DNA from: Laetmonice hystrix
Lineage: Eukaryota
Reading direction: 5' to 3'
DNA: 64,000 nt
NCBI GenBank assembly: GCA_965235115.1
Contig: OZ249438.1
Coordinates: 39,494,001-39,558,000, forward strand
Shown: positions 10,897 to 62,543 of the stretch, in pieces
How the letters are laid out: each line of letters begins with the position of its first letter
Numbering within the stretch: the stretch's first letter is position 1
The notes under the pieces: generated by a model
The model's input: only the letters and a program-made list of their open reading frames with translations
Databases searched by the model: none
Told to the model about the DNA's origin: nothing
Translations under genes and position numbers: made by a program

Positions 10897-10965
10897 GACA
10901 CTGACTGTTTGGATATTTCTCTCATCAGAGACACACGGACAGGGAAGAATGCTCGTACACCAAAG
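10897..10965 (+). CDS. PLCB1: Phospholipase C-beta (PLCB1-3/Plc21C type) internal coding exon, PH domain: DTDCLDISLIRDTRTGKNARTPK
   Basis: 69 nt, phase 0/0. Acceptor cttcaatttgtttcag with branch-like ctgAc ~22 nt upstream; donor AAG|gtgagt. The peptide aligns with recalled human PLCB1 [23 protein letters not shown]. The symbol indicates the clade (PLCB1-like), not strict orthology. Confidence 0.93.
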
Positions 10966-13451
10966 GTGAGTGTTAGTTCCTGGTAATTGTTTGAGGTACT
11001 CATAACTCTAGAATAACCCGGGTTGTTGTTATTCTCATACCTCATTCAGACTACTGTATCATGACCTGAGCTGGGTCACTTCCTACAAACGGTATTAAAA
11101 CCACCAGGTAATATCATCAAGGATGGTGGAGTGTATTCTTGCTATCGTACTGACCTCCGGACTACAAGGTGAAATGTCCTAACTGGGTTCAACAAATGAC
11201 TCATGTTGGGCAAAGTTCACTTTGCAGGGAAAGAATTAGACACATATGATACATAGTGACCTTTTCCGTATGAATATGCTGTGATTTATCGAGCTTCAAT
11301 GGCAAGATAAACATTCTTTGGCATTTGCATATTACTTAGGTGATTAGCTGGCCGAGCTGGCCGCAGTCTGAGACTCTCTGTCGTGATTTGAGAGGACTGG
11401 CAGAGCGTGGATATGACATGAATCTCCAATGATCGATGTAGACATGGTTGACATTCTTTATCCGTATTGTTGAAGGGATGTGGAGAGGAAGGAGTGGTTG
11501 TCGTGAGCGTGCTGTTGTTTCTATAGTCAAGTAGGATGGTGGTGTTTGTCTTCTTTCTGTCTTCACCCACGCAGATATAGACACGGAGGTAACACTCGAC
11601 TCCCTCTTCATATTGTTGTGAAGTGGTGGTACAAGAAAACGTTTATCGTAGAGAAGCACTACGGAGGTGAAAGAAACAGACAACTGAAGGTTGCATCTTG
11701 CTTGAGTTGAATTGAATGATTAATTTTATGAGCAGTCTTTGCAATTTGTCTCTTTTAATTTCTTAGTACAGACAAGATATAATTATCACCTAAATAAAGC
11801 AAGCTCCAATGTCTACTTGACAAATCAATTTCCGTGCGAAGCTATCTTTTGGTAGACTTTTAATCTGTGTGGGTTTTCAAGGTAATTGAAATCGATGTCA
11901 GTATTATAGGGTTAATTCTACCCTATCTAAAGGACCACTTGAAAACCTCGACGGCTACTTTATGGATACTACACGTGATCTGACTAAGTTGATTATCCTT
12001 GCCGAGTGTTACCGAAGACCGACACCTTTTGATAGTCGCTTCACGTTAGGCGGTGTCAAATGATGTCTAATACAGACTTCGTGAGCCATAAATCGTCAAC
12101 AATGTCTTTTGACATGCCGATTTTAAAAATCATTCTTAAAGCAGTCACAATCCTGAACGTAGCTCAGAGTAATATCTATGGAAATATCGAAATAGCTTGG
12201 TGTGCCTTGTTTGTTATAGAAAGATGGAATTATAAACAATTGGGATCACCTAGATAAAAGGCAGCTTTCCAGGAAGACTGAAGAAACTGGTTTCGTATTC
12301 ATTGATATAAAGATGGCAGAGCACGATTAATATAATATTTTTATAGCCTTGTTTCCATGTATAGCCACGTAACATGAGGCGTCTTATTACAAGAGGATGG
12401 TATATTCTTAGGCTGTCAGTGCGCAAAGAGCGAGTGAATTCGCTGGAAGTTTGAAACAGTGAAACAACTCATTTACTGCTTGGTAATTTTCGATGATAAA
12501 ACCAAGTAACACATCAGTTACAAACTAATTTCTTTGTAAAGACAGACTCTACCTCAAAACTGTTCCTTTGTAGTAGCTGTGCAAACAAAAACAGATGTAA
12601 CCTTTTAGAAGAAAATGAAAGCGGTCAAAAAAACCAAATTGAACGGCACAAGATTGGAAGAATAGTGTGGACATGAAAAGGACCTGTTCCTGCTGGGCGC
12701 CTCCTCCAACGAGGACAAAATTATCACCTGTTGTTTGGAAGCCAAATTAAGGATCCAACCGATTTTGAAGATGCCACAAGGACCACAACATTGATTGTAG
12801 CCACGAAGTAAAACATCAGATTAACCTGGATTTTCGTGTCGGCCAGCAATCATTGTTGTATTTGTAACGTCACCGATGGATGGGTTAAAATAAATAATGC
12901 GTTGAACCATATTGTACATCTATAAAATAAAATACTGACAATAATGTACTGGCTGCGCTTTTTCAGCCGCACAAATATGTTCGGTAATCTCGCAAATTGG
13001 GACCGTTGAGGCTCAAAACTGGACCCCATTCGACCCGCCTTAAGTGAATGCCGTGGTCTTTGGTTTACTGACCATCCGAGAGGATACAGGTTGTTACCGT
13101 CCTTACCGTTGTCAATGTGAGTAGAATCTAGTGAATAGCGCCATGCGGTGCTCCGTGTACTACAGGCTCATGGTGACCGATGTACAGACACGCCTGCTGG
13201 TCGTGTCTCATAAAGTTCCTTGTACTGAGTTATTATACAAGAATGCAACGCTTCAAGTAATTACCTCATTTCAGGTAATTAGATAAACCGTAAAAAGTGC
13301 TTCTCAGATTCTCAAGTCAGTGTGATTTTTCACTTTATCATATCCTGAAATTTAGATCATTTTAACATATCTAAAATGTCTGCCATCTTTCCCATTAAAA
13401 TGAGACCCATCGAGCCCCGAGAAGCATTCATGGCTTCAGCCATCCCGGGTC

Positions 13452-46966: not shown

Positions 46967-47251
46967 TCATTTGCATAGCCAATGTGATTCACATAACATA
47001 ACTGCCCAGAAATCGGCTGAAATGGATTTTTGCGATTGGCGATTAAAAGGTGGTTACTAGTAATAAGCGATGATTTCACTTTTATACCTGTTAATGAGTG
47101 CATGTCATCGGCAGACGACCCTTACACAATGGGCTCTTTGATTGGCATTGGTGCAATTACCTTCCCTAAACTGGATTAGAATTAAAAGGTTGATGAGTGT
47201 GCGTGCACGGCCTCTTTCATTCATTTGTGTCACTGTGGCGATGGTACTGGT

Positions 47252-47563
47252 GCAGTGAATAGAGCTGGCTACAAGTTTTGGGGAGGGATGGGAGGCTGAC
47301 AGTGTCACCAAGTCTGTGGACGTCATGGAGGTGTGGGTCTCACAGCACCATGATGATACGATACTTTGTGCCTGGATTGGACGGACAAGTTGTTCCCCCT
47401 GAAGGTATGGCAGTGAATAGAGCTGGCTACAAGTTTTGGGGAGGGATGGGAGGCTGACAGTGTCACCAAGTCTGTGGACGTCATGGAGGTGTGGGTCTCA
47501 CAGCACCATGATGATACTTTGTGCCTAGATTGGACGGACGAGTTGTTCCCCCTGAAGGTATGG
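47252..47563. repeat. Tandem duplication, ~158 bp x2
   Basis: gcagtgaatagagctggctacaag... at 47252 and 47410. Confidence 0.9.
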
Positions 47564-49176
47564 CTGGGGATGAGAGCTCGGGGATGGATGACGAAGCCTG
47601 CCACAGGTAGTTGGGGTGTTGGGGGTGTGTGATCAGATTGGGGGTGAGAGTGGCTGTCTGCCCTGAAGACACTGACCATAGATGGAAGATGGCTTGATAG
47701 GACTGCCAGTACAATCTCAACGTTGGTCGAGTAGTACCGCCAACCTCCGGCAGGAGGACTGCCACTGTAGGTGGCAGCACCGACCTCCGACATGACCCTC
47801 GAGGTGTTAGCGGACACATAGCGCAGGATGAGATTATCAAGGCCAATATGGTATAGGGTGCAGAGTGTAAGTACAGGCACCTGGAATGATAATCAGTCAG
47901 GCCACGCCACACATTGAGAGTTGCGAGTACCAAGGTTAAAGTCGAAAATAGAAAATGTCATTAAAAGGCCCCTACAAAAATCCCTGGATCCGCGCCAGCC
48001 AAGTACTACCAGCCAGATCCGTTGTGGAACGATACAGATCCACAAATCAGCATATCTTGGAGGGGGAATTAATTTGTTTGAAGGAGATTTCTGCCCAAAC
48101 AATTCTTCTTGTAGACGAATGCATTGGCTTAGTCATGGTATCGTAAGATGTCTCTCTGCACAGAGCTCCGGGATAAGTAAGATCTTTGAAAGGATTGGGA
48201 CGGAGGAAAGGTCGGGACGATGTCCTCAAATGTTGATGTATTATGCAGACAGCGCGAACGAATGGTCGCAGTGAGCCTGCGCCATACATCATAATCGGAT
48301 CGTAAACACAAGCTTGGGCCGGGCCACCGCCCGACAAACAAGGCCTTTTTACCGTGAGCGTTTCATTCATCAGGATTGTTGTGGTCCCCAGTAGACTAGA
48401 GGGGAAGGCCCCGTCACTCGCCCGCTTCCTGGCCATCCATGCCTGTCTGAGGGTCCGGATATGAGCAAACCCAGGGTCTGATCGTGGCACGCTGGCGGAT
48501 TGCCGCCACCGCCCCAGTCACGTGACGGTGGTCACGTGATCTTCACACCAATCGTACGTTCTGTCATACACTGAGCTACCTTGCCGAATGGTGAGAGGGT
48601 CGTAGGGAGGCTCTCGTGTTTACGTGTTTCCACCAACAGGTGGCAGGACGGTTTGTCTGTCGACGCCAACGATAACGAAGCATCAGTCCAGTCTCCCAGA
48701 AGTTTGTCTGCGCTCATTTTGACGACATCATGCAGATGTTTATAGAAACCTGCCATCGCTGCGGAGTTCGATCTCTCGGTGAAGCAACTCGCAATAAACA
48801 CCCCATTGTAAAGTTGGAAGATATATTGTTTTATTAACAATATTCAAATATAAGCGCACATACACACCCCTAATGGTAGAGTGCAATACTGCCACCGACA
48901 GTCCTTCGAGTGAAAAACATGGGCCCAGGCTACGTCCATTCACGTTCTCAGGTCTACGGCATGAACGACCTGCCATGTGCTTCTCCCGCCCCAATATATG
49001 TATCTGTCGACTATAGCTAACACCCTTGCGCTGTACGGGTTTGCACTTGAGTACTAATGTTCGCCTAAATGAAGGGGGACTGCTACAGGCGGGTAAATGC
49101 GGTTGTGTAAAAGAGCACACGATGCCCCGAAATGATCAGACATGTATGTTTATTTAGCACTATAAATATACGTTTA

Positions 49177-49385
49177 CCTTATTGACGCACTTTTAGGCGC
49201 GTGCGGCTATAAGCGGATTTTTGTGTTTTTTGAGGAAATTTCGAAATAAAAAATAATGGGTGCGCTATTATGTGAATATTGGTTTTCACGATGGAAGTGC
49301 CCCAGATATAGGCGCATGCGCCTGTATCCGGGTATAGGCCCATGCTTACTTATATGCGCATGCGCCTAAAAGTGCGCCAATACGG
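49177..49385. mobile_element. Tc1/mariner-pogo-type MITE (209 bp)
   Basis: TIR cc(t/g)tattg(a/g)cgcacttttaggcgc at both ends; TA at 49175-76 and 49386-87. Confidence 0.8.
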
Positions 49386-49451
49386 TATGTAAAAACTTCA
49401 TATGTATTGGATGCAATGTCTATTTGGTTCCTTTCACATTATTTGAGATGA

Positions 49452-49544
49452 TTTTAATGTGTTTTTTCTTTGTATTTTTCAGGTAAGCATGCTGTACCAG
49501 AAATACTCTGTCACGTCTAGTGGGTCCTTTCAGTGGTGGTAAGT
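49452..49544 (+). promoter_or_regulatory. Candidate recursive splice site (ratchet point) with 56-nt RS-exon
   Basis: tttaAt branch motif (A49457), tract gtgttttttctttgtatttttc, AG 49481-82 directly followed by GTAAGC 49483-88, second donor GTG|GTAAGT at 49539-44. Confidence 0.6.
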
Positions 49545-49720
49545 TAAATAGATCCCTACCATTGGTCACAGAATACCATGTCCTATGTAGTCGCTCATTT
49601 AGGTAGTAAGTTACATGTATTACTAATCCGAGAAATGATATACCAAGTCCATGTCGCCGGTCTCATGGTGGAGCAACGAGACTAGACAGAGTTCTAGTCT
49701 TGTTGGTTGGAGGCATTACT

Positions 49721-51397
49721 GGCAGTAAGTGACGGGTTGGTGGCAGACGTACTGGTATATCAAAGTAACCACTGGCACCCTGTGGTCTGTGGCAGTAAGT
49801 GACGGGTTGGTGGCAGACGTACTGGTATATCAAAGTAACCACTGGCACCCTGTGGTCTGTGGCAGTAAGTGACGGGTTGGTGGCAGACGTACTGGTATAT
49901 CAAAGTAACCACTGGCACCCTGTGGTCTGGGGCAGTAAGTGACGGGTTGGTGGCAGACGTACTGGTATATCAAAGTAACCACTGGCACCCTGTGGTCTGT
50001 GGCAGTAAGTGACGGGTTGGTGGCAGACGTACTGGTATATCAAAGTAACCACTGGCACCCTGTGGTCTGTGGCAGTAAGTGACGGGTTGGTGGCAGACGT
50101 ACTGGTATATCAAAGTAACCACTGGCACCCTGTGGTCTGTGGCAGTAAGTGACGGGTTGGTGGCAGACGTACTGGTATATCAAAGTAACCACTGGCACCC
50201 TGTGGTCTGGGGCAGTAAGTGACGGGTTGGTGGCAGACGTACTGGTATATCAAAGTAACCACTGGCACCCTGTGGTCTGTGGCAGTAAGTGACGGGTTGG
50301 TGGCAGACGTACTGGTATATCAAAGTAACCACTGGCACCCTGTGGTCTGTGGCAGTAAGTGACGGGTTGGTGGCACGTACTGGTATATCAAAGTAACCAC
50401 TGTCACCCTGTGGTCTGTGGCAGTAAGTGACGGGTTGGTGACAGACGTACTGGTATATCAAAGTAACCACTGTCACCCTGTGGTCTGTGGCAGTAAGTGA
50501 CGGGTTGGTGGCAGACGTACTGGTATATCAAAGTAACCACTGTCACCCTGTGGTCTGTGGCAGTAAGTGACAGGTTGGTGGCAGACGTACTGGTATATCA
50601 AAGTAACCACTGGCACCCTGTGGTCTGTGGCAGTAAGTGACGGGTTGGTGGCAGACGTACTGGTATATCAAAGTAACCACTGTCACCCTGTGGTCTGTGG
50701 CAGTAAGTGACGGGTTGGTGGCAGACGTACTGGTATATCAAAGTAACCACTGTCACCCTGTGGTCTGTGGCAGTAAGTGACGGGTTGGTGGCAGACGTAC
50801 TGGTATATCAAAGTAACCACTGGCACCCTGTGGTCTGTGGCAGTAAGTGACGGGTTGGTGGCAGACGTACTGGTATATCAAAGTAACCACTGGCACCCTG
50901 TGGTCTGTGGCAGTAAGTGACGGGTTGGTGGCAGACGTACTGGTATATCAAAGTAACCACTGGCACCCTGTGGTCTGTGGCAGTAAGTGGCGGGTTGGTG
51001 GCAGACGTACTGGTATATCAAAGTAACCACTGTCACCCTGTGGTCTGTGGCAGTAAGTGACGGGTTGGTGGCAGACGTACTGGTATATCAAAGTAACCAC
51101 TGGCACCCTGTGGTCTGTGGCAGTAAGTGACGGGTTGGTGGCAGACGTACTGGTATATCAAAGTAACCACTGGCACCCTGTGGTCTGTGGCAGTAAGTGA
51201 CGGGTTGGTGGCAGACGTACTGGTATATCAAAGTAACCACTGGCACCCTGTGGTCTGTGGCAGTAAGTGACGGGTTGGTGGCAGACGTACTGGTATATCA
51301 AAGTAACCACTGGCACCCTGTGGTCTGTGGCAGTAAGTGACGGGTTGGTGGCAGACGTACTGGTATATCAAAGTAACCACTGGCACCCTGTGGTCTG
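49721..51397. repeat. 70-bp minisatellite, ~24 copies
   Basis: ggcagtaagtgacgggttggtggcagacgtactgg... at 49721 and 49791. Confidence 0.97.
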
Positions 51398-51875
51398 TTG
51401 GCGGCACGGCTCCATTAAGTACCAGCCCTAGCAACATTAAACGCCTTGTCCTCGGGGACAACAGAACGACAGTGATAAAACCGAAAGGAAGGATTCCGTG
51501 GGATTAAAGACTAGCCGACGTGTACAGCCGCTGGTTGGGGCTGACCTTTCGCTAACCCTCACCTCCGGAAGGTCACCCAACCACCGGCGCGTTCCGCTTT
51601 CTCTGTCCACCGCTAGGGGTAGATTTTAGGTTCTCCTCGACCCGATTTCAAGACCTATAACTGGGGGTGTTAGTTGCATCTGTTAATCTGGGTTCGTAAG
51701 AAGGTAAACGATCCAATTTTAAACTGACAGGCTTAGTTGTTTTGAGACATATTCAGAAGCCATGTTTCGGTATAAAAGCTCACTCAGTGTGGTTGGAGCG
51801 ATGCTATGTCTTGACTGTTAGTTAATGTACCAATGTGGAGACAGGAATAAGACTGAACATGAAGTTGCATGCCAA

Positions 51876-60880: not shown

Positions 60881-62069
60881 AGGAGGAGAGGATGGTGCAT
60901 GCTGTGGTCGTGATCCCAGAGGTGCCCCAGGATGCCGCCTCACTCTAAGAAAAAGCCATACAAGGCGAACATGTTGTCACAAGCCTATTAGTGACACTTA
61001 ATTAGGAGTCTGACTACCTTGATTGAGAATAAGAAAGCCTGAGAGTTGTTATCAAGGGGTCCTTAGTGTCGCTACTAATACCGTCAGAATCAGCCATGAC
61101 AGCCGCGGCTTGTATCAGTCCGATATCTGACAGATCTCCTGTCTCCTGTCTCCCTGTCTCCTGTCTCCCTGTCTCCTGTCTTCACCCATAGGAACAAACG
61201 ATATATTGTTAGAACGTCCTACTGAGCTTATATAGTTCTCATGTTATAACCTGAAACCTGACTTGTTGTATATGTGTCTCGGGCACCGCCCAATATTAAC
61301 GATGGGAGTAGGTGTTCGCGGCTAACCAGAGCCTGTACGACGAACCTGCCGTTGTTCTTTCCGTGGTTAGTGGGTGAAGTAGTGCCTTGTAATGGACGCC
61401 TTTCTACCATGCCCTCCATAAGTACCCTCAGACATGAGCTCTACCTTGATTGCCTTCCCGTTCATAATAGCACCTGATTTTTATCATGGCCAAGGATAAT
61501 GAAGCGGTCGTGCGGACACTTTGTTTATGGGAAAGTCAGAAGAAGGGGAAATGAGGCGAGGTAAGGAAGGAACTAAATGAAGATGGATTCCCATCCCAGT
61601 GGACTGCGTGCGATTGGTGGTTAATGTCGTAATTAGAATTGATACGGGAGGTAGTGAGAGAAAAGCATCCCTGGCAAGGAGTGACGCCTTTCAAGATAGG
61701 ATCGGCTATGGTCGCTGGGAGTGTGTGGACCAGGGGACTGCTTGCCGGATGACAACCCCCAAACAACCACTAATATGGTCTTTGTAAACCCTCTTGACTC
61801 GCTTGGGACCATGGGGGCCTTGCCTTGGGACCGATAACCGGGTGTCAACCCCGCTCCACTCGCTCCGTGTGCTGGGCCCCGCAAGGTTTGGCATGGCATT
61901 AGATTAATCCAACCACGCGGGAGCTATCTGTACCTATTATTGTAAAATAGCACAGTCCATCTTTTTAGGTCAGGGAGAGCTCTCTATAAGCTCCAATTAC
62001 TCAGGAACATCATGTTCCAAAAGAACCTGCAAGACCTCCCGACCTACGACCTACTAGAAGCTGCATGGT

Positions 62070-62429
62070 GTTTCTGGTCGGTGTTTCAGGATCAGAAGTT
62101 GTGTGACATGACGATGTTTCTGGTTGTTGTTTCAGGATCAGAAGTTGCGTGACATGACGATGTTTTTGGTTGTTGTTTCAGGATCATGACATGACGATGT
62201 TTTTGGTTGTTGTTTCAGGATCAGAAGTTGTGTGACATGACGATGTTTCTGGTTGGTGTTTCAGGATCAGAAGTTGCGTGACATGACGATGTTTCTGGTT
62301 GTTGTTTCAGGATCAGAAGTTACGTGACATGACGATGTTTCTGGTTGGTGTTTCAGGATCAGAAGTTGCGTGACATGACGATGTTTCTGGTTGGTGTTTC
62401 AGGATCAGAAGTTGCGTGACATGACGATG
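62070..62429 (+). repeat. 46-bp tandem array made of the 3' splice site plus first 27 nt of the PLC-beta exon (8 acceptor copies)
   Basis: Unit tttctggttggtgtttcag|gatcagaagttgcgtgacatgacgatg. Exon-start positions 62090, 62136, 62182, 62219 (preceding unit has a 9-nt deletion), 62265, 62311, 62357, 62403. Confidence 0.97.
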
Positions 62430-62543
62430 ATGGGGACGCCGGACGTCCCACTCGAGGACAAGATGATCTCCATCGTCTACGGTGCCGACATGGTCAACCT
62501 GAGTTATCTTAACTTCGCGTCCACCTCGCGTGATGTAGCCAGT
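62403..62543 (+). CDS. PLCB1: Phospholipase C-beta internal coding exon: DQKLRDMTMMGTPDVPLEDKMISIVYGADMVNLSYLNFASTSRDVAS
   Basis: 141 nt, phase 0/0; tttcag acceptor, AGT|gtaagt donor. Aligns with recalled PLCB1 [46 protein letters not shown] and continues directly from the exon ending ...TPK. Confidence 0.95.

What the first reader, a model, noticed from the sequence alone, without database searches (positions are those of the whole stretch)
49452..49544. Canonical recursive-splicing ratchet point with a 56-nt RS-exon inside the 51-kb intron
Seen: branch motif tttaAt 25 nt upstream, an almost pure U-rich tract, then CAG|GTAAGC, then a second strong donor GTG|GTAAGT 56 nt later. It is the best AG|GT junction I found by eye in the intron, 38.5 kb from the donor and 12.9 kb from the acceptor. 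Known: Drosophila and vertebrate long introns use this architecture (3'SS fused to a 5'SS, defined through a short cryptic downstream exon). Inclusion of the 56-nt exon would frameshift (VSMLYQKYSVTSSGSFQWWIRSCVT*) and act as a poison exon. Inference: the intron is removed stepwise. I am not aware of this being well described outside insects and vertebrates, and the host taxon is not determined from the sequence.
Basis: partly seen in the sequence, partly recalled or inferred. Interest (0 to 1): 0.8.

Follow-up and report, generated by a model that had tools for sequence, protein, structure and literature searches.

The report
Predicted recursive splice site, PLC-beta intron
A 51-kb intron of a worm's phospholipase C-beta gene contains a site where an intron-end signal directly abuts an intron-start signal, followed by a 56-base decoy exon. 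Sites built this way are about ten times more common in this genome than chance allows, so the intron is probably cut out in two steps, as in flies, though no RNA data exist to prove it.

Summary
The motif is exactly as described. It is by far the best AG|GT junction in the intron: 26.5 bits against at most 17.4 elsewhere on either strand. It is single copy, lying in a roughly 190-nt island between a high-copy transposon and a 70-bp minisatellite.

No RNA run exists for this animal, so use of the site is unproven. The available pieces of the orthologous intron in distant relatives show no such site.

The decisive new evidence is genome-wide. The full architecture (T-tract, YAG|GTAAG, second donor 36-66 nt on) occurs at 15 independent loci. 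The reversed pattern gives 2, and patterns with the first donor scrambled give 1-2. Members share decoy exons of 36-79 nt, TT at -5/-6 and a branch-like motif near -26. They form same-strand pairs, and where I could check (Eph, ephrin, this gene) they lie sense-oriented upstream of coding exons.

This site is therefore very probably (about 0.7) a fly-type ratchet point with a cryptic exon. The mechanism is known. Its occurrence in an annelid-like animal is undescribed in the literature I searched.

The scan has already reported the same architecture in other genes of this genome (ephrin, Eph, shep, srGAP).

The parts
10897..10965 (+). PLC-beta exon A (PH domain, ends in phase 0 with AAG); its donor AAG|GTGAGT starts the long intron at 10966
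   Evidence: translation DTDCLDISLIRDTRTGKNARTPK; donor 11.9 bits
10966..62402 (+). 51,437-nt intron; 36% of it is minisatellite arrays
48810..49391 (.). High-copy transposon-like repeat just upstream of the site, with an inverted repeat at 49175-49213 / 49349-49387; it does not include the splice motif
49453..49458 (+). Branch-point-like TTTAAT (candidate branch A49457, 25 nt before the AG)
   Evidence: most class members carry a YTRAY motif at -20 to -30
49460..49479 (+). Polypyrimidine (T-rich) tract with TT at -5/-6
49480..49488 (+). Ratchet point CAG|GTAAGC: acceptor (15.4 bits) fused to a donor; after ligation to exon A it reads AAG|GTAAGC (10.7 bits)
49483..49538 (+). 56-nt cryptic RS-exon; out of frame, gives a premature stop if retained
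49536..49544 (+). RS-exon donor GTG|GTAAGT (9.1 bits), proposed to define the cryptic exon
49720..51398 (.). 70-bp minisatellite (24 copies) just downstream; degenerate copies begin near 49580
62403..62543 (+). PLC-beta exon B; its acceptor is weak (6.5 bits) and is the last of eight tandem copies (62069-62429)

Best explanation
The site is a fly-type intronic ratchet point with a short cryptic RS-exon.

Proposed mechanism (inferred): once about 38.6 kb of the intron has been transcribed, the 56-nt interval 49483-49538 is recognised as an exon. The signals are the branch at A49457, the T-tract, AG49482 and the downstream donor at 49539. Exon A is ligated to 49483, which releases a 38.5-kb lariat.

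The ligation recreates a donor, AAG|GTAAGC. This donor is mostly used in preference to the slightly weaker GTG|GTAAGT, and it removes the remaining 12.9 kb, including the 56 nt, on splicing to exon B. The mature mRNA therefore carries no trace of the first step.

A minority use of the second donor would insert 56 nt, shift the frame and give a premature stop, which should trigger NMD.

Shown: the motifs, their strength, the single-copy status, the sense orientation in a 51-kb intron, and membership of a genome-wide enriched class. Inferred: that the spliceosome uses the site, and the order of steps.
For: (1) Outlier strength: 26.5 bits against at most 17.4 for any other AG|GT in the intron on either strand. 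The acceptor is stronger than those of the real exons.

(2) Whole-architecture pattern TTTTYAGGTAAG-N{30,60}-GGTRAGT: 19 hits, which are 15 independent loci including this one. The reversed control gives 2. The same pattern with the first donor scrambled gives 2 and 1. The expected false share is therefore about 10-15%.

(3) Of 39 strict Y10-N-YAG|GTAAGT sites, 16 have a donor of at least 8 bits 20-150 nt downstream. The upstream control gives 1 and the antisense control 3 (Fisher 5e-5 and 1e-3). All 16 donors lie at +36 to +79.

(4) Of 53 TTTTTCAGGTAAG sites, 10 have such a donor, against 2 of 159 control windows.

(5) Fly-like details. TT at -5/-6 occurs in 14 of 16 class members against 10 of 23 non-members, and is present here. 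The intron length and both segment lengths lie within the Drosophila ranges (Duff et al.). The exon is out of frame and stop-containing, and the regenerated donor is at least as strong as the RS-exon donor, as described for fly cryptic RS-exons (PMC8605326).

(6) Among 31 candidates there are three same-strand pairs 70-118 kb apart, where 0.22 pairs are expected.

(7) Class members lie sense-oriented upstream of coding exons. Two lie 31 and 18.6 kb upstream of the Eph ligand-binding exon, and one lies 42 kb upstream of the ephrin exon.
Against: - No RNA evidence of any kind. No RNA run is on record. The one run of unknown kind (X4), which holds exon B words, lays nothing on 46970-49719.
- No comparable site in 19.8 kb upstream of exon B in one relative, nor in 8.8 kb in another. 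These relatives are distant (about 75% exon DNA identity) and their introns were not covered in full.
- The bare core TTTTTYAGGTAAG is not enriched (92 hits against 117 in the control).
- The +6 base is C, not T. By U1 pairing the two competing donors are about equal (7 contiguous pairs each), so skipping of the 56-nt exon is not assured.
- The scoring matrix is generic and typed from general knowledge, not trained on this species.
- The site is flanked by young repeats, so its present context is recent.
Confidence: 0.7

Rival explanations
1. Regulated poison (cassette) exon. The 56-nt exon is a genuine alternative exon whose purpose is to down-regulate PLC-beta through frameshift and NMD. The donor-like start is secondary to that role, and subdividing the intron is not the point.
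For: There are strong sites on both sides. Inclusion gives a stop seven codons into exon B. The two competing donors are nearly equal in U1 pairing. Expressed RS-exons exist in flies and mammals.
Against: Scrambled-start controls show that ordinary short exons with these flanks are about 10 times rarer per starting 5-mer than the GTAAG form. The donor at the exon start is therefore the selected feature. No transcript evidence of inclusion exists. This rival overlaps mechanistically with the best explanation.
Confidence: 0.13
2. Chance pseudo-site. A T-rich tract, AG|GTAAG and a nearby GGTAAGT arose by chance in repeat-inflated intronic DNA. The site is either ignored or used without consequence, because a site of this form erases itself from the mRNA.
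For: The bare 13-nt core occurs at chance frequency genome-wide (92 against 117). The full pattern still has about 2 chance hits per genome. No conservation was found in the stretches examined. The scan has read hundreds of windows of this genome, so the best-by-eye site is a selected observation.
Against: The expected chance share of full-architecture sites is only about 10-15%, and a chance site would lie sense-oriented in a long intron only a minority of the time. The site also has the class's extra features: TT at -5/-6, a branch-like motif at -26 and a 56-nt spacing inside the 36-67 nt cluster.
Confidence: 0.12
3. Exon of another transcript (a nested gene, a non-coding RNA or an alternative terminal exon), or a splice site carried in by the neighbouring transposon.
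For: The site sits about 90 nt from the end of a high-copy element and next to a minisatellite.
Against: The repeat family ends near 49391 and none of more than 100 copies extends over the motif. The stretch 49380-49640 is unique in the genome. There is no Rfam match at the site. No RNA contig covers it.
Confidence: 0.05

Closest known systems
Drosophila intronic ratchet points with short cryptic RS-exons (Ubx, kuz, luna and others; Duff et al. 2015; Joseph et al. 2018; Joseph and Lai 2021, PMC8605326)
   Same: A long pyrimidine tract with TT at -5/-6, YAG fused to GTAAG, and a second donor a few tens of nt downstream that defines an out-of-frame cryptic exon. The regenerated donor is at least as strong as the cryptic-exon donor. 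The host intron (51 kb) and segments (38.5 and 12.9 kb) lie within the fly ranges of 11-133 kb and 2.6-64 kb.
   Different: A different phylum (annelid-like). There are no RNA intermediates and no shown conservation. The +6 base is C. The class looks far sparser per megabase than in flies: tens of stringent sites in 627 Mb, against more than 500 ratchet points in the fly genome.
Vertebrate RS-exons in long neuronal genes (Sibley et al. 2015; Blazquez et al. 2018, PMC6224609)
   Same: Exon definition of an RS-exon, followed by competition between the reconstituted 5' splice site and the RS-exon donor. Inclusion gives an NMD-prone isoform.
   Different: Only a handful of fully suppressed intronic sites are known in mammals. 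Most mammalian RS-exons are annotated, included exons that the EJC protects. Nothing about the EJC could be tested here.
Poison exons / pseudoexons of long introns
   Same: A short, frame-shifting, stop-generating exon with good splice sites deep in an intron.
   Different: Ordinary pseudoexons do not begin with a donor consensus. Here that feature is the one enriched genome-wide.

Membership tests
Intronic ratchet point (recursive splice site), Drosophila type | Juxtaposed 3' and 5' splice-site consensus: pyrimidine tract, YAG|GTAAGT | tested here: met
   acceptor 15.5 bits, donor 11.1 bits, CAG|GTAAGC (+6 is C, not T).
Intronic ratchet point (recursive splice site), Drosophila type | TT at positions -5 and -6 (99.5% of fly ratchet points) | tested here: met
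   TT is present here. It occurs in 14 of 16 class members against 10 of 23 non-members.
Intronic ratchet point (recursive splice site), Drosophila type | Lies in the sense orientation inside a long intron (over about 11 kb) | tested here: met
   a 51,437-nt intron between two in-frame PLC-beta exons; the site is on the coding strand.
Intronic ratchet point (recursive splice site), Drosophila type | Short cryptic exon defined by a downstream donor, poorly coding or out of frame | tested here: met
   a 9.1-bit donor at +56. The length is 56 nt (mod 3 = 2) and inclusion gives a stop. Class lengths are 36-79 nt.
Intronic ratchet point (recursive splice site), Drosophila type | Regenerated donor stronger than the cryptic-exon donor, so the exon is skipped | tested here: inconclusive
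   10.7 against 9.1 bits with a generic matrix, but the U1 pairing lengths are equal.
Intronic ratchet point (recursive splice site), Drosophila type | RNA intermediates: exon-to-ratchet junction reads, sawtooth coverage, lariats | not testable with these tools
   no RNA run on record. Only DNA contigs and one run of unknown kind, which lays nothing on the site.
Intronic ratchet point (recursive splice site), Drosophila type | Evolutionary conservation of the motif in the orthologous intron | tested here: inconclusive
   no such site in 19.8 kb and 8.8 kb upstream of exon B in two distant relatives. Their introns were not covered in full. The closest relative (P0002) has no DNA available.
Intronic ratchet point (recursive splice site), Drosophila type | The architecture occurs more often than chance in the genome | tested here: met
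   15 independent loci against 2, 2 and 1 in three controls. Searches give the downstream-donor enrichment.
High-copy repeat-borne splice-like motif | The motif recurs in other copies of a repeat family | tested here: not met
   the family ends near 49391, and the site is single copy by search and by depth.
Poison / cassette exon | Inclusion of the exon in mature transcripts | not testable with these tools
   No RNA data.

The most novel reading that the evidence does not exclude
Fly-type recursive splicing through short cryptic exons operates in an annelid, a third major bilaterian branch. At least about 30 stringent sites lie in long introns of neuronal and developmental genes, and this PLC-beta site is one of them. 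The mechanism would then be either ancestral to bilaterians or repeatedly evolved wherever introns grow long.
Probability: 0.65. Interest if true: 0.65.

Novelty: new member of a known kind. Interest (0 to 1): 0.5.

Why it matters
Recursive splicing has been demonstrated only in insects and vertebrates. A sequence-level signature of the same architecture in a spiralian worm suggests the mechanism is much older or more readily evolved than thought.

It also gives a concrete, short list of sites, including this one, where a single total-RNA experiment could prove it.

For PLC-beta itself, the site predicts a two-step removal of a 51-kb intron and a possible NMD-coupled 56-nt isoform.

The value of this individual site is moderate. 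The mechanism is known, the scan has already flagged the same architecture in other genes of this genome, and no RNA proof is available.

Tried and rejected
- **RNA evidence.** Both run searches returned only runs of one sample and none on record as RNA. Laying them gave DNA contigs only. X4 (58 Mb of contigs, holds 4 of 7 exon B words) laid nothing, so there is no verdict on expression.
- **Repeat origin.** Rejected.
- **Bare-core enrichment.** Absent: 92 against 117. The strict core is only 2-fold enriched: 39 against 19. Only the full architecture is informative.
- **GC-skew orientation proxy.** Uninformative. Flanks of class sites (+0.085) and non-class sites (+0.064) are both skewed in the motif's orientation.
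- **Wider flanks of candidates.** I did not pursue it by other means.
- **Conservation.** Exon B fragments from other genomes were found. The closest (85% identity) has no DNA. One relative was walked to 19.8 kb upstream. Further walking was blocked because the remaining called ORFs start with GTG. Other relatives gave 8.8 kb or less. No RS-like site was seen in any of them.
- **Protein word searches.** Searches with exon B and with P0002 found nothing new. This blank says little, given the length window of that tool.
- **Rfam.** Only a sub-threshold mir-2450-like hit (E 0.12) in the transposon hairpin.
- **Literature.** No paper in the library links recursive splicing to annelids or molluscs other than incidentally.

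Full report
**Observation.**
- A TTTTAAT branch-like motif has A49457 25 nt before the AG.
- In the 20 nt before CAG there are 16 T and 1 C.
- CAG|GTAAGC is cut between 49482 and 49483.
- GTG|GTAAGT is cut between 49538 and 49539. The enclosed interval is 56 nt.

**Host gene.** The gene is a phospholipase C-beta.
- Exon A (10897-10965) and exon B (62403-62543) read through in frame as a PH-domain segment.
- ORF fragments of the orthologous exon in other genomes hit Pfam PH_14, with PI-PLC-X downstream.
- The intron is 51,437 nt. The site lies 38,517 nt from the donor and 12,920 nt from the acceptor.
- Retaining the 56 nt shifts the frame and gives a stop seven codons into exon B.

**Is the site more than chance within the intron?** I used a generic acceptor and donor matrix. 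It is my own approximation of metazoan consensus frequencies, not trained on this species.
- The site scores 15.5 + 11.1 = 26.5 bits.
- The next best AG|GT junctions score 15.5 on the sense strand and 17.4 on the antisense strand.
- Its acceptor is stronger than that of exon A (12.3 bits) and much stronger than that of exon B (6.5 bits).

**Repeat status.**
- DNA contig depth jumps from about 50 to thousands over 48810-49453, then returns to single-copy depth from 49454 on.
- A search of the whole genome with 48780-49500 finds more than 100 copies of a transposon-like family. All of them end at or before about window 49391.
- The stretch 49380-49640 matches only itself.
- Downstream, a 70-bp minisatellite begins, degenerate from about 49580 and perfect from 49720.
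- The site therefore sits in a unique island of about 190 nt between two young repeats and is not carried by either.

**RNA.** Neither the intronic stretch nor exon B finds any run on record as RNA.
- The four runs, all from one sample, were laid on 46970-49719.
- Three are DNA assemblies and confirm the sequence, with no variant at the site.
- The fourth (X4, 58 Mb of contigs) holds exon B words but lays nothing here.
- This is no verdict on expression.

**Genome-wide test.** This test changed my reading.
- The strict motif Y10-N-YAG|GTAAGT has 39 hits, against 19 for the reversed pattern. The bare core TTTTTYAGGTAAG has 92 against 117. The fused motif alone is therefore hardly enriched.
- When I fetched the 39 strict sites, 16 had a second donor of at least 8 bits within 20-150 nt downstream. 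An equal upstream window gave 1 and the antisense strand gave 3 (Fisher 5e-5 and 1e-3).
- All 16 donors lie at +36 to +79. The chance of that under a uniform spread is 4e-6.
- Among the 53 TTTTTCAGGTAAG sites, which are the reference class of this site, 10 have such a donor at +25 to +100 (9 excluding a tandem array). Control windows gave 2 of 159.
- The whole architecture written as one pattern, TTTTYAGGTAAG-N{30,60}-GGTRAGT, gives 19 hits. These are 15 independent loci, this one included. The reversed control gives 2.
- Replacing the first donor GTAAG with the scrambles GAATG or GATAG gives 2 and 1 hits. Ordinary short exons therefore do not explain the excess. The excess exists only when the acceptor is fused to a donor.
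- The expected false share among such sites is about 10-15%.

**Features of the class**.
- Cryptic-exon lengths are 36-79 nt, median 48. This site's is 56.
- Most members have a YTRAY branch-like motif at -20 to -30. This site's is at -26.
- TT at -5/-6 occurs in 14 of 16 members against 10 of 23 non-members. This is the feature Duff et al. found in 99.5% of fly ratchet points.
- Stop codons occur in most frames of the cryptic exons.
- Among 31 candidates there are three same-strand pairs 70-118 kb apart, where 0.22 pairs are expected (P about 0.0015).
- Two candidates lie 31 kb and 18.6 kb upstream of the only Eph ligand-binding-domain exon, on its strand.
- One candidate lies 42 kb upstream of the only ephrin-domain exon, on its strand.
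- These two placements reproduce, from an independent pattern search, what other agents of this scan had noted for those genes.

**Mechanism.** The anatomy matches the model established in flies (PMC8605326).
- The ratchet point is recognised through a short cryptic exon.
- The upstream exon is ligated to it.
- The regenerated donor, here AAG|GTAAGC at 10.7 bits, outcompetes the cryptic-exon donor, here GTG|GTAAGT at 9.1 bits.
- The rest of the intron is then removed together with the cryptic exon.
- Intron and segment lengths fall within the fly ranges.
- The margin between the two donors is small and their U1 pairing lengths are equal. Some inclusion, giving an NMD-prone isoform, is therefore plausible.
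- All of this is inference from sequence.

**Conservation.**
- Exon B fragments from other genomes were found.
- The closest (85% identity) has no retrievable DNA.
- In one relative (about 75% exon DNA identity), 19.8 kb upstream of exon B contains neither exon A nor any AG|GT above 17 bits.
- Another relative gave 8.8 kb with the same result.
- These are distant species with incompletely covered introns. The result weighs only weakly against deep conservation.

**Comparison with what is known, and novelty.**
- The site meets every sequence-level criterion of a Drosophila-type ratchet point with a cryptic RS-exon.
- The RNA criteria could not be tested, and the conservation criterion is inconclusive.
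- The mechanism is known.
- My searches of the open literature found no report of it in annelids or molluscs.
- That the host is an annelid (polychaete) rests on other agents' notes, not on a test made here.
- The scan has already reported the same architecture in other genes of this genome (ephrin, Eph, RBMS/shep, srGAP). This is therefore one more member of that set. What this report adds is a controlled genome-wide enrichment test.

**Verdict.**
- Novelty: a new member of a known kind.
- Interest is moderate.

Noticed in passing
window 62069-62429: Eight tandem 46-nt copies of the exon B acceptor plus the first 27 nt of the exon. Only the last copy continues the reading frame, and that real acceptor scores only 6.5 bits. 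Another first-reader note (s1-311069) already flags this.
   Followed up: partly
window 10966-62402: About 18.6 kb (36%) of the intron consists of 24 minisatellite arrays with periods of 20-162 nt and mostly 90-100% unit identity. The intron appears recently inflated by tandem-repeat expansion.
   Followed up: partly
window 48810-49391; copies e.g. L003-L013: A high-copy transposon-like family of about 300-600 nt, with copies 80-92% identical. It has a 39-nt inverted repeat. In some copies (C1:71.73 Mb, C21:5.46 Mb) an internal unit of about 47-53 nt is expanded into an array.
   Followed up: partly
G000:C13:12290107-12290360 (-): A minisatellite whose 47-53-nt unit is itself a fused acceptor-donor motif (TTTTCAG|GTAAGT). 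At least six ratchet-like sites stand in tandem.
   Followed up: no
G000: C12:13993258 and 14111255 (-); C3:30686283 and 30756116 (-); C13:6350523 and 6459513 (+); C30:6216793 and 6229271 (+); C11:18311227 (-): Other full-architecture ratchet-like sites occur in same-strand pairs or upstream of Eph and ephrin exons. At least about 30 stringent candidates exist genome-wide (loci L017-L115 hold 0.8 kb around many of them).
   Followed up: partly
run X4: A small run of the same sample (58 Mb of contigs, longest 20 kb) holds 4 of 7 sampled words of exon B but nothing of the intron stretch. It may be the project's RNA library, though it is not recorded as such.
   Followed up: no
window 1-64000: G exceeds C on the coding strand across the whole window (cumulative GC skew rises to 2.2; 70% of 700-nt chunks are positive). 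This may be a transcription-linked strand asymmetry.
   Followed up: partly
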